From Haliotis cracherodii (Eukaryota), in NCBI RefSeq assembly GCF_022045235.1, contig NW_027266273.1, positions 4,712,001-4,776,000 of the forward strand: DNA of 64,000 nucleotides, written 5' to 3'. The number at the start of each line of letters is the position of its first letter. The first letter of the stretch is position 1. A model generated the notes under the pieces. That model did not search any database. It was given only the letters and a program-made list of their open reading frames with translations, and had not been told where the DNA came from. The translations under genes and the position numbers were made by a program. Below, in pieces: positions 1-60,800 of the stretch.

Positions 1-245
1 ATGATCATTACTTCTTCTATCAACTACTATTAAATGGCCCTGACAGGGCTGCAGGGATGTGGCTGAAATATTGCTGCTGTGGCACAAAACAACATTCACT
101 CACATGGGATTTGAAGGAAAGTGCTCAGAAAAGCTGCATGCAAAAATTGCTAAAGAAGAAGAGATTTTCGTTAAAGAAATTAGACAACTTTTTTTGTAAG
201 CCTGAGAGTCCCACATTGTAACTTAATATTCTTTAACTTCCTCAG

Positions 246-548
246 AGCCCCCAGGCCCCCCACTGTTTGTGCGGGTCAGCAAGATCACCAAGAAGTCTGT
301 CACTATTGACTGGGGTACGCCCTCTGACGATGGTGGCTCCAAGATCATTCGCTACCACATCTACACCTCAAAGAAGACAAGGGGAGAGTGGAAGGAGGTT
401 GCCAAGGTCAAGGCCTTTGACTCTGACTATGAAGTACAAGATCTTGAGGAAGGCCAAGACTACTTCTTCGCTGTTGCTGCAGAGAACGAAGTCGGCATTG
501 GCAAGATGGCAGAAACAGAAGCTGCTGCTAAGCCCCAGAAACCAATGG
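246..548 (+). CDS. FN3 exon 1 (phase 1-1)
   Basis: ctcag|AGCCC...ATGG|gtaag; EPPGPPLFVRVSKITKKSVTIDW...KPM. Confidence 0.93.
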
Positions 549-15500: not shown

Positions 15501-18500
15501 ACAAGCACAAGCACAAGATTTGTCATACATGCTTGATCATGGAGCATTAAACCTTTGCCTTATGTGTAAAGCCCATTCCTCCTCTAGTTTACTATCTAGT
15601 CCCTTGGGAATTCCAAGTCAGAATATGTCCCAGGCAACTGATGCTTGTCACACATGACTAAATGGATCAAGTGTCTATCTCATCCTATGGATTCAGGACA
15701 ATATGTAAACAATGTTTATTTTTATCATGTTAGAAATCATACAATTAAACTTCAAAATTATCCTGAACTGCAATAAATGAAAGTAACTTTGGTAATAAAA
15801 ATTGTATTGTCCTATATAGAAATGGCATAATTACTTTTATATTGAGGATCATCGTGGTGCACAGTATACAATTTTGTTGGTATTTCTAGGTTGATCCTGA
15901 TACAACAACACTGAAAGTTGAAAACCTCCTCGACAACGTTGGCTACTTCTTCCGTGTAATGGCTGAGAACGCCGTCGGAGTGGGTCAGCCTCTTGATAAT
16001 GAATCTCCCATCATTCCAAAGAGTCCATACGGTAAGGAATAAAAATATATTCATGAAGTTGTTTCTGTTATCGTTTTATTTTTGAATTCTCCAAGAAACG
16101 TCACTTAGATTTGTTAATATATGCATGTACGTTTTAATCTGAAATCAATGTTTTTGAAAATCAAACTTCATATTGATATCTGAGACCAAATATAACTTTT
16201 CTTGACTCCAATTTCATTTTTGTATTTCTTTCACTTTTAGGTCCACCAGGGCCCCCTACTGGACCAATCAAATCAATGCAGATGACCCGCGACTCTGCAA
16301 CCTTCCAGTGGGAACCTCCAAGTCAAGATGGTGGCTCAAAGATTACTGGCTACATCATAGAGAGGCGAGAAGAAGGCAAGAAGTCCTGGATGTATGTTGG
16401 CCGAAATGATGCCGACAATCTTTCCTTCTCGGCCACTGGACTGACCGAAAATATGGACTACTACTTCCGAGTGTACGCTGAGAACAAATATGGCCGCAGT
16501 GATGCTCTGCAGTCAGAAATTCCCATCATACCTAAGAGAGTATTTGGTAAGTACAAGATGTTGTTTTATTCATTTGAATTATTCTGTTTGAAATCATACA
16601 GTTTTAGGTGATGGTATTTTCATTTTTTAAAGTTTTTCATTTTTATAATATATATTTATTATATATTGTATTTTTTTTAAATGACCAAATTCATAAAGAA
16701 AATTATACATAAGTCATTCAGTTACAATGACTTAGCAGTACAGTGATATTTTCAGTTACAAATTGTAACGTTCATTCAGAAATGTTTTGTCTAGAAATTG
16801 TATGATTTCAACTTAAAAATACTTAAATGAGGCTTCTGTTTTGCCCACAAGTGAGTATTTATCACAGCTTATGTTAGTACTGGTTTGTTTTTGGAAACAC
16901 TATTATCTAGAAATTTATCTATTTTGTATCACAGATTCATTGAGTTTAACTTTTTAAAGTTCAATTTCTACCATAAGCTGTTGATGGATACGTCAAGTGG
17001 GATTGTCCACTGGTTTTGGGTTTGCAATGTGGGGGTTTGAACCTGTTTCCATGACGACTTCTCTGAGGCATGGTGAAGGGGCGTGGCACCATGTACGCAT
17101 ATGGCCAGACACGCCCCCCCTTTCTGTGTGACATGGTGTGGACAGTATATTCCTTAGCAGATGTACTTAGACCCATTAGCATTCAGCCCACAGTACAGTC
17201 TATAGGTAGTTATGTTATGTACATTCTTACATAGGCGATACTTTCTGATAAAAGTAAAAATATATTTTGAATTACAAACCACAGATATAAAAAAATAAAT
17301 GACATTTACAATTTTTAAGGGATTTGATAAAAGACATTTTATCATATTGTTTTATCAGTGAAGATTTTGATTGCTGAATTCAACATTTTCATTTAAAATC
17401 ATGATAAATATTCATGCATACATTCAGAGTATTTTTTCTGGGTTGGATGTCAAAGGTCAGTTTCAGTCTTGACCTGAATCAGTGAGTCTATCTGATATAT
17501 TCAACCCACAATCTGCAATATACCTTCACCCTAGACTTAATACAACTAGTATAAATACTATGGTTGAGTACATGGAATAGAGGTCCTGTTTTTTCTCCAT
17601 TTCAAGTCTAGTTCCAACAATAGATGCACGATTGATACAGTAGGTGTGTGATCCGTTTTTATGATTAGAGTTACCTCCCCTTCAAGTGAGTGTTGGCAAT
17701 TAAGAGTGACAAAGTCACATGTTGACTGGTGAATATAACTGAAAAACTGTTCATGCAATGCATGTATGACAGCATGAAATACTATTCCAACATAAAATAT
17801 TACCACATGGTAATATAATGATAGAGTTATCTCCCCTTCAAATGAGTGTCAAAAATTAATAGAGACAAAAATCACATGTGGACTGGTGAATATAACTGAA
17901 AAAATGTACATGTATTCACAGTTTTCATGTAAAGCTCGTAAGATAGCATGAGATATTATTCTAACATGAAATATTACCGCCTGGTAATATAATAATAGAG
18001 TTATCTCCCCTTCAAATGAGTGTCGAAAATTTATAGAGACAAAATTGCCGGTAAATATAACTAAAACACTATACATATGTTCACAGTTTTCATGTAAAGC
18101 ATGTTATGTGGTATGAAAGACTATCATAGTATTACCACCTGGTAATACAGTGGAGCCTCATTGTGTCGAGGGGTGGTCTGGCAGCCTAGTGGTTAAAGCG
18201 TTCGCTTGTCACGCGGAAGACCCGGGTTCGATTCCCAACATGGATACAATGTGTGAAGCCCATTTCTGGTATCCCCCACCGTGATATTGCTGGAATATTG
18301 CTCAAAGAAGCATAAAACCATACTCACTCACTCATTCGTGTCAAACTTTAAAGTGTCAAATTCCCTGTTGTTTCTGACTCATTTTGGAGTCCCAAGTATT
18401 TCAGTTAAGCATAAATTCCCCTGATGTCTCGAACCCTACATTACTCAGCCATTTTTCCAACTCCCCACAAGTTCTCCACAACGAGGTTTGACTGTTTAAT

Positions 18501-33500: not shown

Positions 33501-36500
33501 CCTGCACAGTCACCTGCCTGGAAGACCGAGGACAGTTCAAGTTCCGCATCCTGGCAGAGAACATGTACGGCATCAGCAGTCCTGGACCTGAATCCGAGCT
33601 TGTGGTCACCCGTGAGCCGATCCCAGTCGTGGACTATGACAATCTATGTAAGGGACAAGGCTTTGTGTGCTTTTTGAACTTTATTTGCAAGGTGGTATTT
33701 CACAAAGAACAGATTTTCATGTATTGATATGAGTAATGGATTTGGAAGGGTTGTTTTGATCTAACACTGTATTAATGTTGTTCCTTGAAGAATTTCTGGA
33801 AAAATGTCCTGATTTTGTGCAAAGAAGGGGTATTGTGTCAGTTGCACACATAAAGTAGTTGGCTTACTTGCTTTTAGCCTTGTTGAGGCAGTTCTATTGA
33901 AGAAGGAACAAGATTTCTGTGATAAGAGTCTTGCAGATTGATAAAAAAATTGTTCTCAGTTAAGAGATTTACTAATGTACGAGTACAACTCTAATACACC
34001 TCTAATCTCTAATACAGATGATGCTGACTTCACCGGAACTCCAGTTGATGTAAGCAGAATCCGAGGAGACATCCTCAGCAAGTACATCATCTGTGAGGAA
34101 CTCGGAAGGTCAGTCACAGCTCGTTCCCAGCAATGTTCACGCGATAATATTTATCAAGCATGTGTTAACAGTGAAACAGCTTCATGTTCTCGATGCCTAA
34201 TTTAGTTTCTTTACAAATACCAATATAAGTATACCGATCTCACTTAACAGTCAATGTCATTACAGAGGTGCATTTGGTGTTGTCCATCGTGCTGTTGAGC
34301 GAGCCACCGGTAAGAACTGGGCCGCCAAGTTCATCCGCTGCCGCCCCCACGAGAAGGAGACGGTGCGTCACGAGATCGACATCATGAACCGCCTCCATCA
34401 CAAGAAGCTGCTGCAGCTCCATGAGGCCTTCGACCAGCCCGGAGAGATGGTCATGATCCTGGAACTGTGAGTCCTTTGTTAAGTCTTTGGACCTGTGAAG
34501 ATTCCGGGGTAGAATAGGTCTTCAGCAACCCATGCTTGCCGTAAAAGGCGACTATGCTTGTCATAAAAGGCAACTAACGGGATCGGGTGGTCAGGCTCAC
34601 TGACTTGATTGATGCATGTCATTGATCCCAATTGTGTGGATTGATGCTCATGATATCAGTCACTGGATTGTCTGGTCCAGACTCGATTATTTACAGACCG
34701 CTTTTTCTAACAGTGGGGGTAAATGATATTGGTCATGATAATAATAATACACTAAAATAGAGCTAGGCACATAGTACATGACATGGTAAGGGAATCAGCA
34801 TGTATTTGAATTTCTATTCTCAACTCCCTGAGATGACACTATATTTTCTGGTCAGGTGATCCAGTTTTGGATATAACAAAATAAATGTTTTGTTGAGTTG
34901 GATCAAGAGTTGGATCAAATGTTGCTTGTGTTTGGAAACCTTCATGAGTTGATTAAGATGCTATGGCATGTGTTTGCAGACTGAGTGGCGGCGAGCTGTT
35001 CGACCGCCTGGTCCAGCAACAGTATGACCTGACAGAGGAAGACTGCATTACCTACATGCGGCAGATTTGCCAGGGCGTGCAGCACATGCACAGCAACAAC
35101 ATCATCCACCTTGACCTCAAGGTCAGTCACGCACTTTCAACATTTTTTAATTATGTGCTTGTACATGATGCCAACCCAGAGTACAGTTGTTTCTGTTAAA
35201 ACATACAGATTCTACACAAAAGAAAACCTGATTATTTCATTTGACAGATAAGCTATAGTCATATGAACAAGTATATATATATGGTAACTGTTGAAGGAAT
35301 TTCTATCATAGAAGCTTCATGTTCTACATGAACTCTGAACAATCGGTAGGCAAGTGGCTACAGTGTTTGCCTCATTTCAACAGAGACCCAGTTCAAATCC
35401 AATCATTGGTAAAATATGTGATACCATTTCTGTTTTCTGCTGTGATATTACTGAACTATACCTAAAGGCGGGGCGGTCTGGTAGCCTAGTGGTTAAAGCG
35501 TTCGCTCGTCACACCGAAGACCCGTGTTCGATTCCCGACATGGGTACAATGTGTGAAGCCCATTTCTGGTGTCCCCCGCCATGATATTGCTGGAATAACC
35601 ATACTAACTCACTCACTGTACCTAAAAGCAGTTAAAACCTTAGCTTTCATAATGATGGGTGATGTAACTGAAGCAATGACATAAGTGTCTGTCCTGTCAA
35701 CAGCCAGAGAATGTCATGTGTGTGACCAAGGACAGCAAGGACGTGAAGCTCATCGACTTCGGATTGGCTCAGCGCCTGCAGGAAGGCAAGTCCGTCAAGG
35801 TTCTGTTCGGAACAGCCGAGTTCTGTGCACCTGAGATCATCAGCTTTGAACCTGTGTCCTTCGCAACCGACATGTGGTCCCTCGGAGTGGTCTCATATGT
35901 CCTGTAAGTACCCGGTATTGTCAAACCTGCCTGAAATCCATTAGGAAACTTATTTGAGGTGAGGTGAAATGGGATTTAACGTCACCTCCAAGATTATTGC
36001 ACTTATATAGTGAGGTACATGCACATCTGTGTGTGGCTGCTTGAACTAGTCTGGACTTATAGTGCTAGCCCACTGAGATACCATGCTGCAGTTTAACATG
36101 GATACCCTACTCAGACACAGTATACTGCCTCCAAGCCAACAAGTCCTTGTTTTTTCCCCTTAATGCTTAGTGCCAGGGTAACAACAAGTACCATCTTTCA
36201 ACGTCTTTTGGTATGATCTTGTCAGACAAAGGCTACCTGCTTCTCTTATTCTGTTCATCTGTATGTTTAAGCTACATTGCAATAAATGAAGCAACTGACA
36301 GTGGTCCGAAGTGTTGCTATCCTAGATATGGCATTGTATTTTGAGTGTATTTCGTCCAGACTGAGCGGCTACTCACCATTTGCTGGAGAGAGTGACCAGG
36401 AGACCTTTGTGTACATCAACCGTGCCGAGTTCGACTACGATGACGAGGCCTGGGCGCCTGTATCAGAGGAGGCCCGGGACTTCATCAACAAACTCCTCCT

Positions 36501-39500
36501 GAAAGACAAGAAGTGAGTTGCTAGAGTAGTCTCCCCTTGCCCATGGTGACTGATTGCGTATGTTATGACTTGCATTTTGTCAAGCATTTCAATTTCATGA
36601 TGAGAACGGTAATTACCTTAACAGTTACTAAATGATTGCGAAGATTAGTATTAATTTTACAGACATTTTTTTAGCATAGGAATTAAATCCAGAAGACACA
36701 ACCTGCCCACAAATCTTTCAAAGAGGAGAATGTACAGTAGTATTTGTAGCTTGTTGTTTCGGTACATATTCACTTTCTGAACTGCAACTTTCAGGCAGAG
36801 GATGACGATCGACGAGGCGTTGGCCCACCCCTGGTTGAATGTAAGTACTGCTTCTACCTACCTTGTGTTGCTGTCATCCTCTCATCTGTCCTGGGACATA
36901 CACTGCTTTAAGTGTGGCGGAGGCATGGCTACAGTCTCCAGTTTGGGAATGAGCTATGTGTAGTATTGTACATCATCGCGGAGCCCTGTGTCCCCACTAA
37001 CTGCTGGGGGCTTGAAGGGAAACTACACTTGGGCCAGTTGGCAGTTGGAGCAAATTTGATTCAAGTCTTTCAAACCAAAATTATTTGTCAGCAAACTCAA
37101 AATTTACATTGATACCAGCTTTAGTCAGAATAGTCACGCTTTTAGAGATGCCCTTAAGTATAAGTCAATACCGTATTTACCATATAAAGCCCCCTTATTA
37201 ACTTCTACGCCAACATCTGAGTAATTTTTATAAATGTCCCCTGATAAGACCAGAAATGTACATGACGGTCCATATTTACGGAACTCGGCACTATATGACA
37301 GTTATTAAACTGCCCAACTTTTATGACATTTTTTACATTACATTTTGTTCACAACTTTTGTTCACTTGTGCCCAATCTTTCAAAACAAATTTAACTTGTT
37401 GTTTCTGGTGTTGATAAGCATCCCCCTTTGTCAAGTTTCCAGGGCGCTTATTACGGCAAATACGGTACATTTAATTCTATCTGACTTTTTTCATTAGCAT
37501 TGTTATGCAGTTTAAGAATAGTTGGTATTTCTTTTACAAATGCAGCTGATAAAATTCTTTAACTGGATTTTTTCAAGACTTTCTAATTGTTACATATACT
37601 GTCAGTTTGAATATGATTTGGGATACAGGATTAAGATGGTGATGTTTGGTTCTGAGGGGTAAAGAACCTATAATGTATCGGAACATTTGAAAAGCGACTT
37701 AGTATTTTACGCTTGTTACAAGCTAATTTGTCAGAATATATCTTATTGTATTGTGACAAACTGTAGAGGCATATACCTTTCCTTAACCTAGGAGCATGGT
37801 GCTGACCTTTGACATCAACCATTCCATATCATATCCTTCATCAACCATTCCATATCATATTCTGCAACAATTATAAGGGATGGTGGGGAAGCCTAGTGGG
37901 TAAAGCATTCACTCGTCACGCTAAAAGGCCTGGGTTTGATTCTCCACATGGGTACAATGTGTGAAACCCAAATCGGGTGTTTCCACGGTGATGTGGCTGG
38001 AATATTGCCAAATGTTGGGTAAAATTTTATTTGCCCATCTATTCCGTACCATATTCATCTTTAAGGGTGGAATTTCATTTTCATCATCACTTTGAATTGA
38101 TGATTCCTCTATTGTGCATTGTGAGCATAGTCATCTTCATCAACAGCCAGGCATCTTCATCAACAATGATATGCATTGTTATACATGCAGTGGTGTATAA
38201 ACCATGATATCAGTCATATCCATATATCATTGTATCATAATATTCATTGTTATTAACTGTGGAACTTTGTTGTCATCTAACTGGTAAACTGTACAATGCC
38301 ATATTCTGGGTTTTTTATAGAAATTATATAACAATTTTTCTGATTCAGTTCTAGACTGTTCATAGAGGATTAAATAGGGCGTAATTCTTTTGCTTAAGAA
38401 GTTTCTTTCAAAACCATAGAGTTTTATGGGCAGCCATCTGGTAAAAAAATACAAGGTCATTATTTACATACAAACTGTGAATTCAAAATACCCCAAAATA
38501 CAAATGAACAATTAACTCGGAAACAAAAGATGTCATATGTAGAGAAAGAATAATGTGTATGAAAGAACGTCAGTGCACAAAAAGGACACTAAACTGCTAA
38601 AGTACATCATTGGCAATAAAGAAAGCTAGATGGTGCTGCAATTTGTAAATGATATTTTATTTATTTGGCTTGTTCCTCCGTGTAGATGATAAATACGTGC
38701 CGAAGTGCTCATTGTATTTAATCATTCCTCGTGCACTCAGTTTGATGGTTAAACTATGATACGCAAAAATTGAATTGCAAAATTAGAAAAGAAATGCAAG
38801 TGATTTCTAAAAGTGTTTTGGAGAGGAACAAAAAAAATTTGTCAGCAGATCGGTAAACCAAATAATAACTAAGAAATGTTATTGTCAAGCATATTTCAAA
38901 TAGCATGTCCTTTAAAAAAAAAATCATTCTATATTTGTAAAGTGTCAACTACTTTTGACATCCATGAATCATCATCAAAATATAAAGGATTGTAAATCAT
39001 CATGTCTTATGATCTTTTATCACAAAAGACCCTTGAAGATCCGGAGTAGAATAGGTCTTCAGCATCCCATGCTTGCCGTAACAAGCGACTATACCGGTAC
39101 TTGTCATTAGAGGAAACTAACGTTATCGGGTGGTCAGACTCGCTGACTTGGTTGATGCATGTCATTGATCCCAATTGCGTGGATCAATGCTCATGATATT
39201 AATCACTGGATTGTCTAGTCCAGACTCTATTATTTACAGACCGCCGTCATATAGCTGGAATATTGCTGAGTGCGGCGTTAAACAACAAACCAAACAACTT
39301 TTAGCACAAAATGTACATTCACGTTGACCAACTAGGTTATATCCTGTTTGTTCACCTGAAGTAATACAATGTAATTACTGAATGCACTTAATACATTAGA
39401 CAGCAATGTTTCCCGAAATGGGTAACCAAGTAAGGGGTGTGTGCATTCCACACAAGCAAGATGATAAATATTAACTGAGACAAGGCAAGTCCAGGGCCCA

Positions 39501-42500: not shown

Positions 42501-45500
42501 GCAATCTCCAGTCTTTGTATGGTAGACCGGTGGTATAGATGCTAGTTACCTGACACCTTGTTAATACCACTGGGTAAACATAGGTACATCTTTAACTGGT
42601 TACCTAAAGGTCATAATAGGCTATGCCACATCTGGTTGTATTTTCTCATGAAGTGAATATCAGTCAGTAAGAAGATAGTACTGCGGTCAATAAGAGGTGG
42701 ATTTGTTTCAGTATAGTGTTTTGAAACCTGAGTGGAATATATATAGTATCCAGTCTGGGTTTTGTTTCATAATGTCATTAATGAGATGGCGATTTATTGT
42801 AAATACTGAGAAGAAACGAATATTCAAGTTTTGAAAGAGATGTTGATTCCCTGTGTTGTGTCCACAGAACTGCCAGAACATGCCCCCATTGTGTACGAAG
42901 AACTGGATGATGTCACAGGTTACGAGGGGTCAAGGACACAGTTGGCATGCAAAATCATTGGGAAACCAGCCGCAGAAATCATGTGGTAAGTTGGTGTGAA
43001 TTTGTATTGTTTGAAATATTCGCAAGGGCAGATCCAGAGGCATGTTTCAGCACGGCTGATTTCTCAGATGTGTGTTCCGATGTACAATTTTGTACAATGT
43101 TTGTGCCACGTTATATAGAAATACAAGCCCTGTATACAAGTCTCTCCTTGTATACTCTGAATTGATTTACGATTTCAGTTGTCAGGTACCCTAAGGTATT
43201 TGTGGGTGGAATAGATCCCTAGTATGTATATTCATTGTAAGAGAGGGGCACGGGTGTCCCAGTCGTCTAAGGGGTAGAGTTGTGCAGAGTTGCATCCCTT
43301 GGGCACGCCAGAAACCTATGATTTTGGGTTCGAATTCCAGTGCTCTGATTATGTTTCTAGGTATGTCAGGACCATACCCATGCTCGTGGGTTTCACCGAA
43401 GTGGTTAACGTCTGAGACCTGCATCACTTCGGGCTTTCCTCCCACATTAAGCTGACACGCCGTGATATAACTGAAATACTGTTAAAAGCGGCGTTAAACC
43501 CAACTCCCTCACTCATTGTAAGAGCCAGCTAATTGGGGATCAGGTAGTTACTGTCTGTGTGACCTGGGCCCATTCTATAAAGTGTTCGCAACTCTTACAC
43601 AATTATATATCCAATACATAAACAGAGACATACATTCATTGTAGCGCTAAGATTACTTCATGGAATGATTTTCTCCCTGAGTGAAATTGCTCTCATTTGC
43701 ATTTTTGATAGTAGAGTGGATCTGCCCTTGATATTAAATTTTCAAAATATTGGCTTTATGTACACAGTAAGTCTGAGGTACTCTGGTTGGTTTATAAAAA
43801 ATTTGTGCAACAAAGCAAAATTGTGGACAGTGTTACACACTTAAATGTGTGATTCACGCAGCTTCAGGTGGAAGATTTAAGCCAGTAGTCAGCCTCTTAT
43901 TCAGGTGCACATTATGAAGACTGTGGGTATACCTATCAAGGTGCAGTACTTGATGTACCTATGTGCTCATCCTCAAGACAAGAATATCCCAGATTATCAC
44001 AGCTTCTCTTCCATGCTGTGTATTTTGGCAGCGCTGATGATGAGAGTTACACCTTTACCAGCACTTCTGCACGTGTTATGACATTATTTGTGCATCACAA
44101 AACAGATGCACATCTTGATGCAGAGATCTGACATTCAAGTACGTGATAACTTGTGGGTTGTATAACATAAAGTCATTCAGTGCCACTTAGGCCAACCTCA
44201 TTGCATTGTGGTAGGAATCTGCAGTTGAAGGATTTGATACACTCAGAAACACTGGATCGAGTGAGTTTGGCTTAACAGTATTCCAGGTACATCAGACGTG
44301 TTAGTTTAATGTGGGAGGAAAGCTCAAAGTGATGCAGGTATCAGACGTTTTCCAGGGATATGGTGTGGACAAACCTAGAAACATCATTGGGATGAACCAG
44401 GATTCAAACCAGGTTCTGTTATCCCAAAGGATGCAACTCTGCGCAGCAAAGTGGGCCACCTGTGTCCAACCAAAATCACGGGAAAGAGATAAACAACACT
44501 TTTTCAGACACAAGCTTTTTGTCCTTTTCATTTTTTGGCCCCATCTTTACATTTCATGGAATAAAACTTGCATTACAATACATGGTGTTTTGATTGTAAT
44601 AGGTAAACAAGAAATAGGTCACATCCCGTCATTATTATCTTTGTTCTGCTGAAGTCGAGGTGGTTTTAATGGAAAATACGTGGTGGTGTTATAGGGAAGA
44701 CATGGTTTTACTGGGGAAGATGTGTGGTGTTATGGGGAAGATGTTCTTTTACTGGGAAAGATGTGTGGTGTTATGGGGAAGACATGGTTTTACTGGAGAA
44801 GATGTGTGGTGTTATTGGGAAGACATGGTTTTACTGGGGAAGATGTGTGGTATTATGGGGAAGACATGGTTTTACATGGGAAGATGTGTGGTGTTATGGG
44901 GAAGACATGGTTTTACTGGGGAAGATGTGTGGTGTTATGGGGAAGACATGGTTTTACTGGGGAAGATGTGTGGTGGTGGTGATGCCGTTTGTCTATGTAG
45001 AAGAAGTATGCTGGGTAGTCATTACAAGTCCCATGGTTTGTACTCAGCCTGTCTGCAATGTTATTCTTCGCTATTTGATCTGATGAGGTTCCAGAATCAT
45101 TCATTGGCTTCATCACCTGCGCTGAACAGATGGTATATGAGCCATTAGATGGTTGCTTAACGAAGAGATGCTCCATCATGAGAAGGCACACCGGTTGTGC
45201 AAGTAAATGTCCTTTACATATTTTAATGTAGTTTTCAAGGTTCTTTAAGCTGAGGAGAATGATAAATTAGGTACTTTACACATTTTCGGATTCAATCTTG
45301 CTGATGACAGCTGCTCTTTTTATGGATTAAGTGGTTTGTTTTAATCAAGTTAGCCACTTAAGATTAGTGTTTCGATGACAAAAACTCTTTTCAAACAACA
45401 CATCCCTGATGTCAACTGTTCACCTACTGTAGACTTATTCTGCTATTCTGGTCATGGTCATATTGGACACTACTTGAAGGTCAGCTGAGAGAGCACTGTG

Positions 45501-51500: not shown

Positions 51501-54500
51501 ACAAATGAGACAGAAGCTCTAAAATATCCAATAGCAGACCAAATTGCTCCAGACAACTTCAATGAGACCCAGCTAGTTCCCTGAGCAGAAACTCATTTCT
51601 GTCAGAGCAGATTACACCATGTGTGTACCATCCATTAAGTATTTCACAAACTCCTGGAATTTTTTACAACCAATCTCTTGAAGCTGCTTCAGTTTTCCGT
51701 CAGGAAGCGGGGCTGTTAAACCTGGCATGAATGAGGAGTTGGTAACATCTCTTGAAAGAAACAAGTGTTGGTATGCTGTTAAACAAACTGTAAACCCCAG
51801 ACTTCCAAGTACCCGTGGACAGCTTTTTATGCTACTCAGAAGAAGTTAAAAAACAACTGATTTTTCATGTGATTAGTTAATATGACATGGCTGGTAGGTA
51901 TTGCAACAAAGAGCCTTCCAATTGTGGGCTTGCTTTAACTTGTTTTGAGTATAGTATATATAAGGGTTCTTTCAACTCTGTTCAAAATCATTCAAAATTG
52001 TGTTTAAGATAAAGAATTGTAACCTTTTTGTAATTCTTTTAAAATATTTACCAAGAATTTGTTATACTTGTAGTGATATTTTTATGACATTAAGTGATAA
52101 ATTCCCATATAGAGGCATAGTCTTATGAATGTCAAGTACTGTATTTGTTGAATAAACAATTGTGTCAAAATAATAGCCAAAAAATAAATTGATCCAAATC
52201 AACACTCACTATCTCATGTTAATTGTTTAGTTCCATTATCTAAGTTAAGTCTATATATTTGCATATTTATCTACGGCAAGATCTACCTCTTTCAATACAA
52301 AACATATATGTAGCAAGCCAAGCTTCCTGCTTGTAAAATATACAAAGATGTTTCTGGTTCAAGAATCAAAGAAGCAACAAATCTTTAAATAACATTTTTC
52401 AGTCCTCATCACTGAAAGAATGCACAAAGCTATGGCGTAGTTTACGACTGACCTACTTAACTGTTGCACATAAACACTGGGAGAAAATAGTTTGATCTGA
52501 TGTAAAGCATGCGCAGTGGTTACCCTGTCGGGAAGCTATTGTCAGGAACAGGTGTAGATGATGCCGTCATCAGCAGCCATGGTGCAAGAAGCCCCTGATG
52601 GAAGATGACCCTCAATTATCTATAAACAGTCTCGATATAACACTGAGGACGAGCCAAGCTCTAACACTGTAGAGACTTTTTTTATGTACATGTCAACATT
52701 ATCTATTTAGAAAATTAAAAATAGATTCACCCTTAAATATTTATCCTGGTTCAAATTACTTTCTCTTAAGATTTTACTCTTTGCAATGCCATAATTAGAT
52801 TTTGGATCAATTTCAAGGTAATGATGATATATAGTTAGTTATGATGAAAGGAATATTTTCCAGTTTATCGACTGTTCTTAATAAACTATTAATTATCAGA
52901 TTATCTAGATAAAACCTATCATCAAGCATTCCATCCTTATCAAAATGTTCCAAAAATGTTGGTATGTTTCTTAATGAAAACGTCAAACATTTATGAATAG
53001 CATCAAATCAGGTAAAAATAGCTCCACCCAACAGTTTCATGCAAAACAAGTGTTAGACATTTTAAAGCCGTGATCCAATCCTGAAGGTCAGAGAGTAATA
53101 TTACAAGAGTATTTGTGTGGACAGGCGTGCCCCACATGTGTGTTATCACAGCCGATATCTCCCTGCAAGGTAGAACCTCTACAGGTATACCATCATGTCA
53201 GCTGGATGCGCCGACGTAACTAAAGGTTCCGTTCTTGGCACAGGCTTAGATCATTCCAGCTCTGACTTCCTCTGTTTTTTGTTGGCGTGTAGGTGAAATT
53301 CCTCCTCTCTTGCTCCTCACACAGTCTGGTAGCTTTAGATCGGTGTAGGCATTTGTTCTTTAATTCTCCCATTTCACGTTTTGGCGTAGATGTTTATCAC
53401 AGTTTTTTGTCTCGGATCCGGTGGAACAAACTGACTTTTGAGACACATCTTGGGTCTCGTTTCCATTTGAAGGGCACTTTTGATATTGGGATAAAGTTTG
53501 CTGTGGAGTTTTAATTTTCGGACCCTTCATTATATTCCTTGTTGGATATTTGGGTTTTCATCATCACAAAACCTGATTGTTCTGCTTTTCCATTTTGGAT
53601 GGACTGTGTGCTGTGACTTCAAAACCGTTTGGAGAGATTGTGTGGAGCTGTAGCTAATTTGGCTTGTTGAGTCACAAAGTTTTCGAGTTGTGACTCTTAT
53701 TCTTCATTGTGGATTAAAGTGACTAAGTCAGGTTGTGGTTTTGAAAATCAGTGAATATTCATTGTGGAATTTCGCACCACAATGAGCCAGGAATAATAAT
53801 ATTTTGAGAGTGATAATTTTTTTGTGGTGTTGTGTGAATCTAGCTACCTGCAATCATGAGTTTGATGTTTATTTTGCCCAATCATAAGTGCCCTTCAAAA
53901 GACTGTCCATTCCATGCATCCGAGATGTCATCCAAAAAGAAACTATTTGAGGCCCCTGCTGAAGAAATACAGCTAGCAGGGGCCACTGGTGCTGGAATTG
54001 AAGATGGTGGCAAATTGAGAAAAGGTCCAAAAAAGAAAATCCGAACGGCATGGAAGACTGCGGATGTGGAAGCTGAAGAAGAGAGAAGAGGAAGTATGAC
54101 AGGGAGTGTGGCTGAGGACGATGTTGTGACGGTGTTGTCTGTTGACACGGGTAATGAGTCGGGGTCAAGTGAGTGTGAGGCCAGGTTTACACTTGGGTCT
54201 GTGGCAAGTGACAAAGTAGATGTTGAAGACGTAGAAACTGAATTTTACGCCGACACTGGAATTGATTCCCTGGCTAGCGATGATGTACATTTGGATGATA
54301 TTCAGGAAGAAACCGCTGATATTGCCCTTACAAAACTTGAGAAAATTGAAGAAATGGAAATGCCACTTGTTGAACAAGATATTGAGGAGTTTGATGTGGA
54401 TGATATAAAAGAAGAAATAGTTTTTGCGACGGAACCTGAAGTTCCTCTTGTGAGTACTGCCACGGAACAGGAGCTCATTCTAAAGTCGGAGGAACAGGTT

Positions 54501-54817
54501 GTTGAAAGTGCTGTGGCCGTTAGGGTTGTACGAGAGGTTTGTGAGGAAATAAAAGTTGCAAAACATGTGGTTGAGACGCAACAAATATACACAACAAACA
54601 TTCAGGAGGAGGTAATCCAGTCCGAGACACTGACAGAGACACATGTGGCAGTGGAAAGGTGCGTGTTGTCAGGCCTCAGTGTAATTCAACCTTGGATAGG
54701 ACGTAGTGAAAGTCAGGTTTGATAAGCTGCTTCTAATCGTCAAGGAGAGGTAATAGGCTATGATTCCTGTAAATGTTTTGAAATAACAGTGACTCTTCAC
54801 GTCATCTGCCCTCAGAA

Positions 54818-54852
<35 letters not shown>

Positions 54853-57800
54853 CATACATGGTCAAAAATGATTGTGATGGTGTCTATCTTCTCGGTCAAA
54901 TCATGGTCAGAGTACTTGATATATTACCTTGGTTAATGTGTCAGAGTGCATTCAAATTGCATTTTCAGCTCCCTGGGGAGTATAATTAAAAAAAAAACAA
55001 TTCTGTAAGCATAAAACAGATAATCAATACTCTCATCTGAGCTTAAGTAAAACATTAAGTCAGTTATGACATAATTTGTCAGCCACAGAAGCTAGTATGG
55101 CTGTTGATGACCTTCACCTTGCTTGCATGTTGTTATTGTTAGAGCTGTATTCTGAGAATGGAAAAGAAAGCTGGATGAGTTCAGGTATTCCAGTAGACTA
55201 CATTCATGGGTGAATATGATATCTTCACCTCATTGTACCAGTTTTTTCAGTATATATTTTAGTAACACATTTATGATTTTAAACATCTATGCATCCGCTG
55301 AGATCTTCTCATGACCACTATCAGGAACATGTTACCATGGAAACCTATGTCAGAACAACATGGTATTCCTATTCGAAAGGGAAATAGAAAGACTACGTCA
55401 AATCACTTTTTGGCATGTTGCTCAATAAATGCATGTTCTGAATCGGTTCCAAGTTTTACACCAAGAACCTGCCCAAGCATTTCAAGTGTTGCTAAGTGAT
55501 TTTATATATACTGCTGGGTATTTGTATGTACTTACTTTAAACTGACAGATTGGAGTTGTTTTAATCCTATCATTATCCCATAATTCCTCTGCCACAAATT
55601 TTGTTGTGTGAAGATATCTGAAAAAAAAACGGTAGGAAGTTGTTAAGAGATTGATAGGAAGATTAGATGTTTCGCTTGGCTCACAGGGCAGATATTAGCG
55701 TTAATCTCGGCTGTATTTGCCATTATGAACTGTATAAAAAGCACTTGCATCCACTTGATAAACTGCCAGACGTCTGGGAAGCTGCTTATGAGATTTATCT
55801 GCAGGAAAAGTAACGTTCTTACTTGATTATTTTCTCTTCTTTGTAATCAAATGGTTATCGGTGTAATTGAAACATACATATCTACCTAAGAACTTGTTTT
55901 GACTTTATTTTTATGGGAGTGTGATATTAGTTATAGTTTGATGATAGTTGTCATTCATGGTGCCTCATATATAGCTTGGGGGTATACTAAAACGAATTCG
56001 AGGATTTTCTTGGATATTCAGTGTTATTGGTCAAGAGCTGACCAAGCTGTTTATTTCATCACTGTCTGTTGTTGGTGTGATCCTGTGCAGAAGTATATTA
56101 GTCACTACAGGTCTAATCAAGACTTCTTTTTGGACTTTTTGTGAATTTTAATGAGGTTTGCTTTTAAGGCTCAGTTGACATATTACATGGGACTAGGCCT
56201 GGTTCAATTGGCAGTTCCAGCAAGTTTGATTCAAGTACGGTATTCGACGTAATAAGTGCCCCGCTCTAATAAGCGTCCACGGCAATATTTGCTAATATAT
56301 TGACTAGTGCACGATCCCAGTTAGGACCCCTTCCAATTGATCAATGTACACAAGACTTACTTATTCGTGTATAATGCGCACTCATGTGTTATATGCACCC
56401 TCAATTATGGGCAATTCAACTCTGGAAAAATATATCTGTCGTATGTAAACATTTCAGGCTGTCAGCATAAACCACGAAATTTACGATTTTTCAACCAAAA
56501 TAATATTCTAATAAGAGCCCCCTATTTCTAATTTTGAGAGGGCCCTGGGAGCTTATACGGTAATTCAAATCTCACTTTGTTGTTTGATGAGTCAAATTTG
56601 CTCCCGTATGTCAGTCTAGCAGATAGCAATTAGCCTAATTACACAGAGACAGTGTCCTATTGGCTTGAATCACAGGTTCTTCTGTCAGTACCTTACCTTT
56701 GCTTGGGTGTAAAAGTCTTTAAAAGTGACTTCAGGCTTTTGGTATTTAATTCAAGTTACTCACTAAGTTATCCAATCTTTGTAACTGTTAGGGGGCGGTC
56801 GGGTAGCCTAGTGGTTAAAGCGTTCGCTCGTCAAGCCGAAGACCCGGGTTTTGATTACCAACATGGATACAATGTGTGAAGCCCATTTCTGGTGTCCCCC
56901 GCCATGATATTGCTGGAATATTGCTAAAAGTGGCGTAAAACCATACCAACTCAATTGTAACTGTTTGGCCACCATGTTGTGCAATGTATCGTGGACCATA
57001 GTGATGTACTTAGTAACTCTATGCAAGCGGCCCACCTCGGGCTGATGTGTGGTGGAGTGGTTGTAAGGTAGCTGTAAGGAACGTAGCATGTTGTTGTTTG
57101 TAACCTTCTCCAGGATGTTGCTGATGAGGGTTCCCATGGAGACTGGAATATTACATGTGTGACTTTACAGGAGAGATTTGTTTGTTCTTGTTCCCTGTGT
57201 CTATGGTGGCATATTAAAGATGTAGGGTCAGAAGGACGTTCTGTTGTATATGCGAGGAGATGGGTTCCAATGAAATAATCAGTGAATCTGAGACTGGACA
57301 TCGCCAGACCATCCAGACAAACTCAACCAAAGTTTAATATTGATCACCTGTGACTGTTGTCTCATGTGGGGAAAAGAGTAAAATGTTACAATCAACGACA
57401 TTCACAGAAAATTTGAAAAAACCTGTGTGACCACTCTAGAAAGAGCTACAAAGTCTCTGGTCTATATTTAATTTATCTTTTTCCCTTCCAGGTTGAAAGA
57501 TGGTGAAGAAGTCCTCCCAAGTCCACGTGCCAAAGCCACATACAAAGATGGCATGGCAACACTTGATCTCAAAGACCTTGAACCTGAAGATGGAGGGAAA
57601 TACACCTGCCGTGCTACCAACAGCTTCGGAGATATTGAAACCACAGCAAATCTCAAAGTTGAAGGTCAGTACGCTTCTCGTGTGAACAATGGTGGTGAAG
57701 ATGAATGGTGTGTCTGGAGAGTATCAGTTGTTTTATTCTAATCTTTCATATCTGTATGTCTTCTAATATAGAAGGATAACATATGCATTTAATTTCAGTA

Positions 57801-60800
57801 ATATTTGATGAGTGATGGGATGTTTTTAAATATATATAGCAATGGAGGTGATTGTATATTTTGAGTTATTATTGGTGTTATTTTTGTTTTACAGAAGTTC
57901 GCCACCGTAGAAGGAAGAAGGCTGAAGAGGCCAAACTCAAGTGAGTGTTTTGGAATATTTTAGCCAATCAATAGCATTTTTAGTGACCTTCATTCCATTA
58001 TTCTTGTAGAATATCAGGTACAGGATCAGGAGGGAATGTACTATCTTAGTCATGAATGACATGGTATGATTATGGAAGTTTCCTACAAGGAAACATGGTC
58101 GCCTCAAACTAGTAGGCCTTCTGATGGGGTGATATTTATTTATTGTCAAATGTAGGTTAGACCGGTATTAAGTTTAATGACTAAGTCATCATCCATTTCT
58201 ACCTGGAAAGGGCGGTCGGGTAGCCTAGTTAAACCATTTGTTCATCACGCCGAAGACCCGGGTTTGATTCCCGACATGGGTACAATGTGTGAAGCCCATG
58301 TCTGGTGTCCCCAGCCGTGATATTAACAGAGATGATAATCTGATGATTACTTGTTCTGGGTGTCTTCGTGTTTCAAAAATGTAGATTAAGTGTTCAGATC
58401 CTTGAGCCCTTGATGCTTTATATGATGCTGATAAGAGTCTATCCCCATAGATGGTTTATGCCATTTCCTGGAACACCCCAAGAAGTGTAACATCTTCATT
58501 GACATCTTCATTTCTCACCGCAGACAACTTAAGAAGGAAGTTTCAGAAGTTGAGGCCGACATCCCCCCAGAGTTCACACTGCCTCTGATCGACCAAGTAG
58601 CACCAGTGGGAGACTCCATTGAGTTGACTGTCACAGGTATGTTAAGTGGAGGAAACAGATGTTTGTGAATAGACCTTGACATTTTTTCTTTCAGAATTTT
58701 GGCAAGATGCTAATATATTTTGACCCATTTGTATGCTCTGGCTCACTGCTGGATGCTGACAAGGGACTGTGACACTTTGGGACTGTTACAGGTATGTTTG
58801 GTGGAGGAAACATGATCCTTATGTTGAAGAAGAACAGATATCGATGTTGGTGTATAGACCTTGAAGTTTTTATGCTGTATTTTTGGCAAGATGCTAATAT
58901 GTTTTGACCCATTTGTATGCCCTGGCTCACTGTGGGACTGTGATGGTGTGGCATGTTGCTCAGACTCTCAACCACCGGTTGTCTGATCCTGACCTGACAA
59001 TGAACAGGTGTCCATGGTATATCTGAACCATTGATGTTTGAGGCCATCCACTCATTCTATGCCTCATCCTGCCATACATGCATGCTAGAACACTGTCACA
59101 TTATGTCTTGACATGATGGATTTAAAATCAAGCTATAGCTCAGGCTTCCTGGTTGCATATTACTCCAGCTGCCTCAGTGCTCAGCCACAATAGTGTCTAG
59201 TCCTTCCGGGTACCCATTCAACAACTGGAAAGACTGTGGTATCATCATGTCAGATAACAATGTACTTTTAGACTTTTAGAGATGCAGAACACTTTGTTGT
59301 AAGGTGGATCTTTGACTGAATCTTTCAACAATGTTAATAGAAATTATTTATATCAAGATAGAATCTTCACTGGTCTCATTTATTGTCACAGTGACATGCC
59401 GACCTGAAGCCGAGGTAGACTTCTATCATGGGGATGAGAAGGTGTCGGCCGGAGGTCGCTTCAAACTGAAACAGGACAAGGACGTGTATAGTCTCATCAT
59501 CAGCGATCTCAGACTGGAGGATGCTGGAGAATGGAGCTGCCAAGCTACAAATGCATTTGGCAAAACACAGTGCTCATGTGACGTCCAGGTGCTTGGTAAG
59601 TCTTGTTTATAGTCTCCATGAAAATAAATGCCAGATATGTCTCTGTCACAGGTTTAGGTTTGTTGCAGGACGTAAGTTTCAGAAATTGTTTATCGCGCCA
59701 GTAAAATATATGCGAGATATTTTCTGTCATGGGAATAGATTTATAGGAGGACAGTATCAGTTTTAAAAATCATCTTTGATGTTAGGTCATTTAATCAGAA
59801 CTGAATTTGCAGGATGCTTGAAGACCCAGAGGCCATAAGGCTGTGGGATACACATTGTTTTTTCTATGTCCTTGTGCAGCAAGATGATGCGAAGCATTGT
59901 TATTGTTGAACTCATGCACCTTGCTGTGACATCACTGTTGTTCTGCTACAGACTCTGTGCCAGAAGGTTCCAAGAAGCCTCGGTTCACACGAGGACTGGA
60001 TGCTATGACCATCACTGAGGGCAGCAAGGCACAGCTGAAGTGTCGCGTCACCGGACTGCCACAGCCACAGATTGAATGGTAAGAAAGCATAACACTCTGA
60101 TCTGACTGAAAGTAAACGGTTAGAGTTGATTAGTTGAATGGTTTCAGTTCTTCTTAAAGTCTTCAAAATAACTTGAATCATACACTCAAAGTGACGACTG
60201 TGGGAGGTGTTCGAAGAGACTTTGATCAGACTTTTCATTCAGATTATCAAAATAGACAAGTGTAGCTAGCTATATTTCTCATATGAAATCATCATAAAGA
60301 AAAGCAAAATTTAAAAAAGAGAAATGTCTTGTGTAACAATAGATTATAACCGGTCTACCATAATTTCAGTGTTTTGTGATTTGTAAAGACATGCTCATGG
60401 TATTGTCTGAATCATAACATCAACTCTGCTGTCAGTAGAGATTTCTTTTGATTATGAAAAGGGTTTTGTTGCTTTTATTTGAGTAAGTAATTATCTTTGT
60501 TTCATTCAACCATTGTAAGGTTGTATGTCTGTTTTGAAATATTGCTTCTTGTGATGAGCATTACAATTATTTGAAAAAAAAAGCCTTCAAGCTGGCAATA
60601 AAGAGTGTCAGCAGTAAACAATTAAGTGGACTCCAGCTGTGGCTGTTGAGTGCTGATGGAGTCATCTCTCCTTCCAGGTACAAAGACAGACAGAGGATCG
60701 AGGCCAGTCACCACTACGAGATGATCCAGGAGGATGACGACGTTCACATTCTGGTTATAGATGGTGCCACCAAAGACGACACAGGGTCATACATGTGTCG

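What the first reader, a model, noticed from the sequence alone, without database searches (positions are those of the whole stretch)
53200..54658. Large acidic first exon with a PKA-type site: a telokin-like kinase-less product
Seen: 267 codons rich in E, D, V and T with no Ig or FN3 similarity, an upstream in-frame stop, a 4-codon uORF at 53782-53796, an N-terminal Cys/His cluster (HKCPSKDCPFH), a basic patch (KLRKGPKKKIR), RRGS at 54084-54095 and a phase-2 donor giving ...VAVER-LKDGEEV. Established: RRxS is the PKA consensus; PKA phosphorylation of twitchin releases catch in molluscan muscle, and telokin is a cyclic-nucleotide kinase substrate. Inference: a disordered acidic head on four or more Ig domains under cAMP control.
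Basis: partly seen in the sequence, partly recalled or inferred. Interest (0 to 1): 0.75.

Follow-up and report, generated by a model that had tools for sequence, protein, structure and literature searches.

The report
Internal start exon, kinase-less Ig isoform
Inside an intron of a giant titin/twitchin-like muscle gene of a sea snail sits a transcribed alternative first exon encoding a conserved, mostly disordered acidic head, which most likely starts a shorter protein that lacks the kinase.

Summary
ORF 53856-54658 (267 codons, E/V/A/D/T-rich, no Pfam, PDB or Atlas match) has an in-frame TAG 12 nt upstream, the uORF at 53782-53796, RRGS at 54084-54095 and an AG|GT donor.

It lies in the 14.5-kb intron that splits the first Ig domain after the kinase. 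That Ig's first half is at ~42868-42985 and its second half at 57492-57664.

Spliced contigs of four runs from four coded organisms cover 53.2/53.3 kb to 54656 in one piece, so the exon is transcribed. Intron bins beyond it are empty in three runs. The joint 54658>57492 was not printed. I infer it from three concordant contig features in three of the four runs.

Displayed variants give pN/pS of about 0.19 (P = 0.001).

About 20 unnamed ORFs, one from Nucella, share an invariant L..LLPNHKCP..CPFH motif. One of them (P0022) runs from the head straight into an Ig first half.

So the telokin-like architecture is supported. Three things qualify it:
- The abalone product would begin with an orphan half-Ig.
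- RRGS is not conserved in the nearest relatives, although a distant subgroup keeps RKTS/RRxS sites.
- Orthology of the host gene to twitchin is not shown.

Function is untested. I rate it a new variant of a known kind.

The parts
53197..53855 (+). 5' untranslated part of the alternative first exon. The transcript start lies somewhere in about 53197-53305.
   Evidence: Left ends of the contigs that carry the ORF are 53197 (X4), 53271 (X6), 53300/53515 (X12) and 53305 (X1), ragged and without long unaligned letters (table 8). Only 4 upstream ATGs occur here. One CAGCTG E-box lies at 53199; there is no TATA or CArG box in 52700-53320.
53782..53796 (+). 4-codon upstream ORF (MSQE, stop)
53856..54658 (+). 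Coding part of the first exon: 267 codons plus 2 bases (phase-2 end). This is the acidic head.
   Evidence: for the sequence. Transcribed in 4 of 4 runs. pN/pS about 0.19 on the displayed variants. Homologues.
53862..53915 (+). Conserved N-terminal motif LMFILPNHKCPSKDCPFH (residues 3-20), with the spacing H-x-C-x4-C-x2-H
   Evidence: L3, P8, H10, C12, P13, C17, P18, F19 and H20 are invariant in 11 of 11 aligned sequences (A2). No Pfam or PDB match.
54012..54044 (+). Basic patch KLRKGPKKKIR (residues 53-63)
   Evidence: Only partly kept in the P0002 group and replaced by Pro-rich sequence in others.
54084..54095 (+). RRGS, a basophilic-kinase (PKA-type) consensus site
   Evidence: Kept in P0001 and absent in the P0002 group and the CPQKDCPFHPP group. 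Analogous RKTS/RRxS sites occur in P0017/18/20/21/22.
54141..54200 (+). Second conserved motif, acidic and Ser-rich: VDTGNESGSSECEARFTLGS (residues 96-115)
   Evidence: In the 6-sequence alignment A1, G99, E101, S105, T112 and S115 are invariant. In the 11-sequence alignment A2 the consensus here is VDTGEESxxSDYESxxTLDSG and only T112 stays nearly invariant.
54456..54653 (+). V/E/T-rich C-terminal part of the head (residues 201-266), modelled as one long helix
   Evidence: AlphaFold2 on A1: helix 201-266, pLDDT 70-89 over about residues 211-260, from a shallow alignment of 6 sequences. The sequence is not conserved outside the genus.
54659..54660 (+). GT of the donor (GGAAAG|GTGCGT)
   Evidence: The contigs of X4, X6 and X12 leave the genome at 54656 in the tool's left-shifted convention, each with 31 further letters.
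42868..42985 (+). Exon of the kinase-linked form that encodes the first half of the first post-kinase Ig (...PIVYEELDDVTGYEGSRTQLACKIIGKPAAEIM, then TG|GT). It is bypassed by the head transcript.
   Evidence: I-set positions 5-32 at E 0.013. The 27 loose letters before 57491 in X4 equal the end of this exon but for one letter (table 7). The acceptor at 42867|42868 was read from the sequence and is not shown by RNA.
57492..57664 (+). Shared exon: second half of that Ig (I-set positions 36-90). Inferred acceptor for the head exon.
   Evidence: RNA joints and pieces. The main contigs end or begin exactly at 57491 in X4, X6 and X12 (table 8).
57895..57940 (+). 46-nt exon, part of a basic linker (EVRHRRRKKAEEAKL)
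   Evidence: Joints 57662>57893 (cut +2) and 57940>58524, both GT..AG, in 4 of 4 runs. Translation.
58524..58636 (+). Exon with the rest of the linker and the first half of the next Ig
   Evidence: Joint in 4 of 4 runs. Translation.

Best explanation
This is the first exon of an internal transcription unit of a giant titin/twitchin-family muscle gene.

How the transcript is built:
- Transcription starts at about 53.2-53.3 kb. That is inside the 14.5-kb intron that splits the first Ig domain after the kinase.
- The exon carries a 0.55-0.65-kb leader and 267 codons.
- Its phase-2 donor at 54658 joins the shared exon at 57492 in frame.

The product lacks the FN3 rod and the kinase. It consists of:
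- a lineage-restricted head, made of an N-terminal L..LLPNHKCP..CPFH motif, a basic patch with RRGS, an acidic Ser-rich motif and a long acidic V/E-rich spacer;
- the orphan second half of one Ig;
- a basic linker;
- the gene's tail of nine or more Ig domains.

Inferred function: the Ig tail places the protein where the C-terminus of the giant protein binds on the filament. The head adds a negatively charged, flexible extension. Its His/Cys motif binds a metal ion or a partner, and its basophilic-kinase site may be a switch.

Shown: the ORF and its features, transcription, coding constraint, conservation of the head, and head-to-Ig linkage in one relative.
Inferred: the exact junction, use as a true first exon, translation, and all function.
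For: (1) Position. The exon at 57492 is I-set positions 36-90 only. The matching first half is at 42810-42986. The X4 main contig carries the end of that exon directly before 57491 (table 7).

(2) Transcription.
- The runs hold GT..AG joints 57662>57893 and 57940>58524 in 4 of 4 runs, so they are cDNA-type.
- Contigs cover 53197/53271/53305/53515 to 54642/54656 in 4 of 4 runs.
- Bins 55167-56151 have depth 0 in X1, X6 and X12.

(3) Junction, inferred.
- In X4, X6 and X12 the piece ends at 54656. That is where the tool places a joint whose 2 letters (AG) fit both sides; compare 57662 '(cut +2)'.
- Each of those contigs has exactly 31 further letters. A k=31 graph gives 31 for a merge into exon 57492, against 29 for 57895 and 32 for 58524.
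- In the same three runs the main contig stops or starts exactly at 57491. In X1 the head contig stops early at 54642 with no further letters, and there the main contig runs through 57491.

(4) First exon.
- The 5' ends are ragged.
- An in-frame TAG lies at 53841-53843.
- A phase-2 entry at the AG at 53842-53843 would hit TGA after 4 codons.

(5) Coding.
- 7 nonsynonymous and 10 synonymous displayed variants over 627 and 174 sites give pN/pS of about 0.19, binomial P = 0.001.
- The frame continues into the Ig exon.
- The ATG has A at -3.

(6) Family.
- Hits P0001-P0005 and further hits P0013-P0022, about 20 ORFs with cluster members, one from Nucella lapillus.
- 9 positions are invariant in 11 of 11 sequences.

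(7) Link to Ig elsewhere. P0022 continues from the head into I-set positions 1-35 (E 2.3e-4). It ends at ...KW, the position where 4 of 5 Ig first halves of this window are split.

(8) Single copy in the genome.
Against: - The joint 54658>57492 was not in the 15 displayed of 234 joint rows. All runs were contigs, which cannot show starts, strand or level, and their RNA status is the tool's guess.
- The product would start its Ig tail with half a domain, which cannot fold alone. No replacement half exists in 36500-57491: of 486 open segments only 42810-42986 matched, next best E 0.33.
- X1 lacks the junction letters.
- Contig depth of the head is 1-14% of that of the shared exon (57.8/24.3/34.1/11 against 407.6/2228.2/370/94). 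The tool warns that such figures are poor measures.
- 18 of 107 contig differences were not displayed, so pN/pS rests on a subset.
- No annotated long protein with this head was found among 1.84 billion representatives.
- No promoter element beyond one E-box.
Confidence: 0.68

Rival explanations
1. The head exon is real and is a first exon, but its productive partner is exon 58524. That joint is also in frame (AG+A = Arg) and skips the half-Ig and the 46-nt exon, so the protein would start with the linker and an intact Ig. The 57492 joint would then be a minor or by-product form.
For: Both acceptors keep the frame. It would avoid an unfoldable half domain, as seems to be avoided in P0022. 219 joint rows were not shown.
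Against: The trailing-letter count is 31 in 3 of 3 contigs; the k=31 graph logic predicts 32 for 58524. The main contigs break at 57491, not at 58524, where the same contigs run through (table 8).
Confidence: 0.1
2. The transcript exists, but in this lineage it is a decaying or non-productive remnant. Ancestrally the head exon carried or preceded its own Ig first half, as in P0022. After that half was lost, the abalone product is misfolded, is little translated, or acts only as the free head region.
For: P0022 has the head plus an Ig first half. The window has no such half after the head. The leader is long and holds 4 uORFs. Contig depth is low relative to the shared exon.
Against: pN/pS is about 0.19 within the genus. 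The ORF is intact and 97% identical in P0001. The P0002 group, at 47% identity, keeps an open frame of 218-221 codons that also ends ...QR before intron-like letters.
Confidence: 0.12
3. It is a stand-alone single-exon gene nested in the intron. It would encode the 288-aa read-through ORF that stops at 54720-54722, as modelled for the Nucella homologue and as in P0001.
For: P0001 (288 aa) and KAL8585015.1 (223 aa, 'hypothetical protein') are read-through ORFs.
Against: - The bin 54576-54772 holds just the depth expected if coverage ends at 54642/54656 in 4 of 4 runs (my arithmetic, table 2).
- 3 of 4 contigs leave the genome at the donor.
- The tails after the donor are not conserved between homologues.
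- P0001 and the other homologue ORFs read on past the presumed donor into unconserved letters, which is what an ORF call without splicing would give (my inference).
Confidence: 0.04
4. It is an internal (cassette) exon of the giant protein: an insertion between the kinase and the Ig tail, like the interdomain insertions of titin's M-band region.
For: A pyrimidine-rich tract and an AG lie at 53842-53843. The donor phase equals that of exon 42985.
Against: - Entry in phase 2 at 53844 meets TGA after 4 codons. Frame-compatible AGs exist only inside the ORF.
- Contigs run unbroken through 53844 back to 53.2-53.3 kb.
- The homologues begin with Met 4-85 residues before the motif, and sequence upstream of that is not conserved.
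Confidence: 0.03

Closest known systems
Telokin / kinase-related protein (MYLK)
   Same: An independent transcript starts from a promoter inside an intron of a muscle kinase gene, downstream of the catalytic domain. The product shares the non-catalytic C-terminal Ig part of the kinase. Telokin is phosphorylated by a cyclic-nucleotide-dependent kinase at S13 (PMC4530952, abstract and introduction passage). The telokin Ig domain binds myosin (PMC3114093, passage).
   Different: - Telokin is 17 kDa and identical to the C-terminus of MLCK. Here a 267-residue unique head precedes nine or more Ig domains.
- The junction here enters the middle of an Ig.
- No CArG box was found; that the telokin promoter depends on one is recalled, not checked.
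- The host gene is a giant FN3/Ig protein, not MYLK.
- No sequence similarity to telokin was found; the head has no PDB match.
Myorod / catchin (molluscan myosin heavy-chain gene)
   Same: It is a molluscan muscle protein made from part of a large filament gene. It has a unique N-terminal domain (156 residues) in place of the enzymatic part, and that domain is a phosphorylation target (PMC12040844, passage; PMC4410989, abstract in the listing).
   Different: It comes from a different gene and has a different tail (coiled-coil rod, not Ig). It is described as specific to bivalve catch muscle. No sequence relation was tested or seen.
PKA sites D1 and D2 of Mytilus twitchin
   Same: A basophilic-kinase site lies in a non-domain stretch of a twitchin-like protein. 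D2 lies behind the kinase (PMC12040844, passage).
   Different: D1 (Ser-1075) and D2 (Ser-4316) lie in linkers between Ig 7/8 and Ig 21/22 of the full-length protein. RRGS here lies in an alternative head and is not conserved beyond close relatives.
Other internal-promoter products of giant muscle genes (titin Cronos, APEG-1 of SPEG, short unc-22 and nesprin isoforms)
   Same: The general principle is the same: N-terminally truncated isoforms made from internal promoters. Nesprin short isoforms appear in the abstract listing of PMC3981789. The others are recalled and were not read here.
   Different: None is known to me to carry this head. The comparison is by architecture only.

Membership tests
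Telokin-type product (independent C-terminal product of a muscle kinase gene) | Transcribed from its own promoter in an intron downstream of the kinase domain | tested here: met
   Contigs with ragged 5' ends at 53197-53305 cover the exon in 4 of 4 runs, and intron bins are empty in 3 of 4. The kinase exons lie at about 33975-36830. The promoter itself was not mapped, because contigs cannot show starts.
Telokin-type product (independent C-terminal product of a muscle kinase gene) | Spliced in frame onto the shared C-terminal Ig exons | tested here: inconclusive
   The frame fits. The junction is inferred from the piece end at 54656, the 31 trailing letters and the main-contig breaks at 57491 in 3 of 4 runs. 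The joint row was not displayed.
Telokin-type product (independent C-terminal product of a muscle kinase gene) | Protein sequence identical to the C-terminus of the kinase, small (17 kDa), one intact Ig | tested here: not met
   There is a unique 267-residue head. Entry is at I-set position 36. Nine or more Ig domains follow.
Telokin-type product (independent C-terminal product of a muscle kinase gene) | Phosphorylated by PKA or PKG with an effect on relaxation | not testable with these tools
   Only a consensus RRGS is present, and it is not conserved in the nearest outgroup.
Twitchin (orthologue of Aplysia/Mytilus twitchin) as host gene | Kinase domain specifically twitchin-like | tested here: inconclusive
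   One exon scores best with MYLK4 (58.3 bits) and Aplysia twitchin 1KOB (57.1 bits). Another scores best with DAPK3 (42.5) and 1KOB (42.4), at 25 of 49 identical residues.
Twitchin (orthologue of Aplysia/Mytilus twitchin) as host gene | Domain plan of Mytilus twitchin: 24 Ig, 15 FN3, and a kinase followed by the last few Ig (site D2 lies behind the kinase, between Ig 21 and 22) | tested here: inconclusive
   The review passage gives the Mytilus plan. Here, by eye, the window's first 16 kb shows FN3 exons only, and at least nine Ig-type exon sets follow the kinase. The whole gene was not assembled.
Zinc-knuckle or zinc-finger motifs | Match to a curated zinc-binding family | tested here: not met
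   Only sub-threshold hits to a C2H2 fragment model: PF22996, E 0.32-0.34, 11.5 bits against a cut-off of 27, in 2 of 5 proteins. No PDB hit at E <= 1. The H-x-C-x4-C-x2-H spacing is my reading of the sequence, and two members have x5.
Ig I-set or FN3 domain (the head itself) | Profile match | tested here: not met
   0 Pfam families at E <= 1 for the 267 residues. The model is disordered plus helix.

The most novel reading that the evidence does not exclude
The head marks an unnamed, mollusc-wide family of kinase-less 'tail' proteins made from giant muscle kinase genes. In it, one Ig domain is assembled from interchangeable 5' halves. Where the head exon brings, or is followed by, its own half (as P0022 suggests), the domain is whole. 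In abalone the half was lost, so the isoform carries an exposed half-Ig next to a long acidic helix. This orphan half could work by strand complementation with a mechanically opened Ig of the full-length protein or of a partner. That would give a stretch-dependent dock whose affinity is set by the His/Cys motif (metal or redox) and by phosphorylation of the head.
Probability: 0.12. Interest if true: 0.75.

Novelty: new variant of a known kind. Interest (0 to 1): 0.5.

Why it matters
Giant titin/twitchin-like proteins set passive tension and, in molluscs, the catch state. Small products of the same genes, such as telokin in vertebrates, are strong regulators.

The finding has four consequences:
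- A conserved but unnamed head that starts a kinase-less Ig-tail isoform would add an unrecognised component to gastropod muscle filaments.
- It gives a handle for finding that component: the L..LLPNHKCP..CPFH motif.
- It means current annotations, which model the exon as a stand-alone 'hypothetical protein', are probably wrong.
- The half-Ig at the junction is a concrete and testable oddity of how alternative promoters interact with domain boundaries.

Tried and rejected
Searches and tests that gave nothing:
- Pfam on the head and on 8 homologues: nothing above cut-offs.
- PDB profile search with A2: 0 hits at E <= 1.
- ESM Atlas on residues 1-135: no usable hit.
- Profile search of the 5.8-billion-protein set with A1: only the 5 known proteins came back, and only 8000 word-rich candidates were scored.
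- A hidden Ig first-half exon between 36500 and 57491: an HMM built from 8 seeds (one of them an FN3 false positive) was run against 486 open segments, and only the known 42810-42986 matched.
- Promoter motifs: one E-box at 53199, one MEF2-like site at 52715, no TATA and no CArG. This is not informative.
- ARAGORN on the SINE-like repeats at 56600-58400: 0 genes.
- Three literature searches gave no paper on a kinase-less twitchin isoform in molluscs within the held library. Supplements were not opened.

Readings rejected:
- A poly(A) end at 54656. It would give an alignment to 54657 with about 27 trailing letters, there is no AATAAA, and the ORF would have no stop.
- A cassette exon, because of the frame.
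- A transposon origin, because the ORF is single-copy.

Steps not done:
- I did not build, search or fold the joined head-plus-Ig model.
- The pN/pS figure uses only the rows displayed: 89 of 107 contig differences, of which 17 distinct sites lie in the ORF.
Full report
WHAT IS THERE

The window carries, on the + strand, the 3' part of a giant muscle-type gene. Its parts, in order:
- FN3 exons from 269 to about 16.6 kb.
- FN3/Ig exons at 29.2-33.7 kb.
- Kinase exons at about 33.9-36.8 kb.
- Ig exons from 57.5 kb to the window's end.
- At least four more Ig exon sets in the next 10 kb of the contig (L002).

The kinase exons place the gene in the MLCK/twitchin/DAPK group:
- One exon scores best with MYLK4 (58.3 bits) and Aplysia twitchin 1KOB (57.1 bits).
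- Another scores best with DAPK3 (42.5) and 1KOB (42.4), with 25 of 49 aligned residues identical to 1KOB.
- I therefore call the host titin/twitchin-like. Orthology to twitchin is not shown.

THE OBSERVATION

- The ATG is at 53856, with A at -3.
- An in-frame TAG lies at 53841-53843.
- 267 codons are followed by AG|GT, with the exon ending at 54658.
- The 4-codon uORF is at 53782-53796.
- HKCPSKDCPFH is residues 10-20 and KLRKGPKKKIR is residues 53-63.
- RRGS at 54084-54095 is the only [RK][RK]x[ST] site.
- Composition is E 16%, V 11%, A 8%, D 7.5%, T 7.5%, with 63 acidic against 25 basic residues.
- Pfam finds nothing at E <= 1.
- The ORF is single-copy in the 1.18-Gb assembly.

WHERE IT SITS

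The exon at 57492-57664 matches only positions 36-90 of the I-set model. It is the second half of an Ig domain.

The first half (...PIVYEELDDVTGYEGSRTQLACKIIGKPAAEIM, then TG|GT) lies at about 42868-42985.

The ORF therefore lies inside a 14.5-kb intron that splits the first post-kinase Ig at the Trp codon. Four of the five Ig first halves that a pattern search found in the window are split at this same position.

TRANSCRIPTION

The look-up of sequencing runs listed 24 holders, all labelled 'RNA? (a guess)'. I laid four of them, X1, X4, X6 and X12, from four coded organisms and four studies, on 53000-58900.

They behave as cDNA. GT..AG joints 57662>57893 (cut +2) and 57940>58524 occur in 4 of 4 runs. 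Bins 55167-56151 have zero depth in X1, X6 and X12. X4 has a background of about 5.

In each run one contig covers the ORF and its leader:

| Run | Coverage | Contig depth |
|---|---|---|
| X1 | 53305-54642 | 57.8 |
| X4 | 53197-54656 | 24.3 |
| X6 | 53271-54656 | 34.1 |
| X12 | 53515-54656, plus 53300-53479 | 11 |

- The bin 54576-54772 holds exactly the depth expected if coverage stops at those ends (my arithmetic on table 2).
- The left ends are ragged, with at most 4 unaligned letters. The contigs run unbroken through the AG at 53842-53843.
- This is what a first exon looks like. It is not what a cassette exon looks like.

THE JUNCTION (INFERRED)

The table of joints showed 15 of 234 rows, and 54658>57492 was not among them. 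Three features point to it.

(a) Where the piece ends. In X4, X6 and X12 the piece ends at 54656, two letters before the exon end. The tool does the same at 57662 '(cut +2)' when the exon-final AG also fits the acceptor's AG. Without a second aligned piece, the match would have run on to 54658 or beyond.

(b) How many letters follow. Each of these three contigs has exactly 31 further letters.
- In a k=31 graph, a branch that merges into a shared exon keeps 30 letters after its last private letter.
- For a merge into 57492 the last private letter is 54657, because the G at 54658 is shared with ...ATGTG of exon 42985. That gives 31 letters.
- A merge into 57895 would give 29, and a merge into 58524 would give 32.

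(c) Where the main contig breaks. In the same three runs the high-depth main contig ends or begins exactly at 57491, the shared G. In X1 the head contig stops early at 54642 with no extra letters, and there the main contig runs through 57491 (record position 842).

The 27 loose letters before 57491 in X4 equal the end of exon 42985 but for one letter. This shows the kinase-linked junction directly.

I put the 54658>57492 joint at about 0.8.

CODING

The variant rows displayed cover 89 of 107 contig differences. Within the ORF they give 7 nonsynonymous and 10 synonymous sites over 627 and 174 sites. That is pN/pS of about 0.19, with binomial P = 0.001. None of the displayed rows lies in the Cys/His motif or in RRGS.

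The donor phase keeps the Ig frame (...VAVE-R-LKDGEEV).

THE FAMILY

- A full scan of 1.84 billion representatives found 5 proteins: P0001 (97% identical, a 288-aa read-through ORF), P0002 (47%) and P0003-P0005 (about 30-40%).
- Two word-indexed searches with distant members added P0013-P0022, and cluster look-ups added more.
- All are unnamed ORFs of 145-356 residues, except KAL8585015.1, a 'hypothetical protein' of Nucella lapillus.
- In an 11-sequence alignment, L3, P8, H10, C12, P13, C17, P18, F19 and H20 are invariant. The motif reads (R/K)LYLLLPNHKCPx(1-2)KxCPFH(PP).
- A second acidic motif (DTGEESxxSDYESxxTLDSG) follows. The remainder is acidic and not alignable.
- The tails after the presumed donors are unrelated. 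I take this to mean these ORFs were called without splicing.
- No Pfam, PDB or Atlas relative was found.
- An AlphaFold2 model from 6 sequences has mean pLDDT 52. 158 of 267 residues are below 50, and one long helix spans 201-266 at pLDDT 70-89. This is weak evidence.

A KEY RELATIVE

P0022 (179 aa) runs from the head directly into I-set positions 1-35 (E 2.3e-4, just under the cut-off, as a half domain must be). It ends at ...ALKW-LV. This ties the head family to Ig tails in a second lineage.

It also shows a form in which the first Ig is whole. The window has no second Ig first half anywhere in 36500-57491, so the abalone product would carry an orphan half-Ig.

Whether that half is tolerated as a linker, or is skipped in part of the transcripts, is open. 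The joint to 58524 is also in frame. So is the question of whether the half has a function of its own.

THE PKA IDEA

- RRGS is kept in P0001.
- It is absent from the nearest outgroup (P0002/6/7/8) and from the CPQKDCPFHPP group.
- P0017, P0018, P0020, P0021 and P0022 keep RKTS/RKLS. P0018, P0021 and P0022 also have KRRS/RRLS. All these sites lie between the two motifs.
- Basophilic sites therefore recur in this head, but not at one conserved position.
- The known twitchin sites D1 and D2 lie in Ig linkers of the full-length protein (PMC12040844, passages).
- cAMP control is possible and untested.

COMPARISON WITH KNOWN SYSTEMS

- Telokin. It is transcribed from a promoter in intron 28 of MYLK, is identical to the C-terminus of MLCK, and is phosphorylated at S13 (PMC4530952, abstract and passage). 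Its Ig binds myosin (PMC3114093, passage). The present case shares the gene architecture. It does not share the product's size, the identity with the parent, or any sequence.
- Myorod/catchin. This is the closest molluscan precedent for a unique head on a filament-binding tail.
- Three literature searches found no description of such an isoform in the held library.

VERDICT

- It is a new variant of a known kind: an internal-promoter isoform of a giant muscle kinase gene, carrying an unnamed conserved head.
- Function is unknown beyond inference.

NOT DONE

- I did not build the joined exon model.
- Earlier notes of this scan on the same window and the species name were used as leads only.

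Noticed in passing
window 57895-57940 and 58524-58636: Two small exons shown by GT..AG joints in 4 of 4 runs. Together they encode a strongly basic linker (EVRHRRRKKAEEAKL-K-QLKKEVSEVEAD) between the first and second post-kinase Ig. This is the region where Mytilus twitchin has its D2 site, but no RRxS is present here.
   Followed up: partly
window 56152-57136 and 58122-58318: Repeat copies, including a tRNA-like SINE head GGGTAGCCTAGTGGTTAAAGCG..., reach contig depths of 10^4-10^5 in all four runs and give many spurious joints. Related open frames (GRSGSLVVKAFARHAEDPG...) recur at about 35.4, 37.8, 46.2, 48.7 and 56.8 kb. ARAGORN calls no tRNA here.
   Followed up: partly
window 54808-54859: A (GAT/ATG)n microsatellite just after the donor. 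It reads as poly-Met or poly-His in open frames, and the reads tool skipped it as a repeat.
   Followed up: no
window 44620-45150: Tandem repeat open in all three + frames (units like GRHGFTGEDVWCYGEDMVLLGKMCGVMGKTWFYW), inside the same 14.5-kb intron. GC skew is high there.
   Followed up: no
window 1-16600 and 33900-36830; L002 1-10000: The host gene shows an FN3-only stretch, a kinase only about half identical to Aplysia twitchin in one exon, and at least nine Ig exon sets after the kinase. It may be a titin-like paralogue rather than canonical twitchin.
   Followed up: partly
proteins P0017, P0018, P0020, P0021, P0022: A subgroup of the head family (motif CPNKKxCPFHPP) keeps a PRKTS(H/Q)DI or GRKLS site, and three members also have KRRS/RRLS. 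These are candidate conserved basophilic-kinase sites.
   Followed up: partly
window 53293: A good pyrimidine tract plus TAG|G lies at 53292|53293, close to the left ends of the X1 and X12 contigs (53305, 53300). The X4 and X6 contigs run through it. An occasional upstream non-coding exon cannot be excluded.
   Followed up: no
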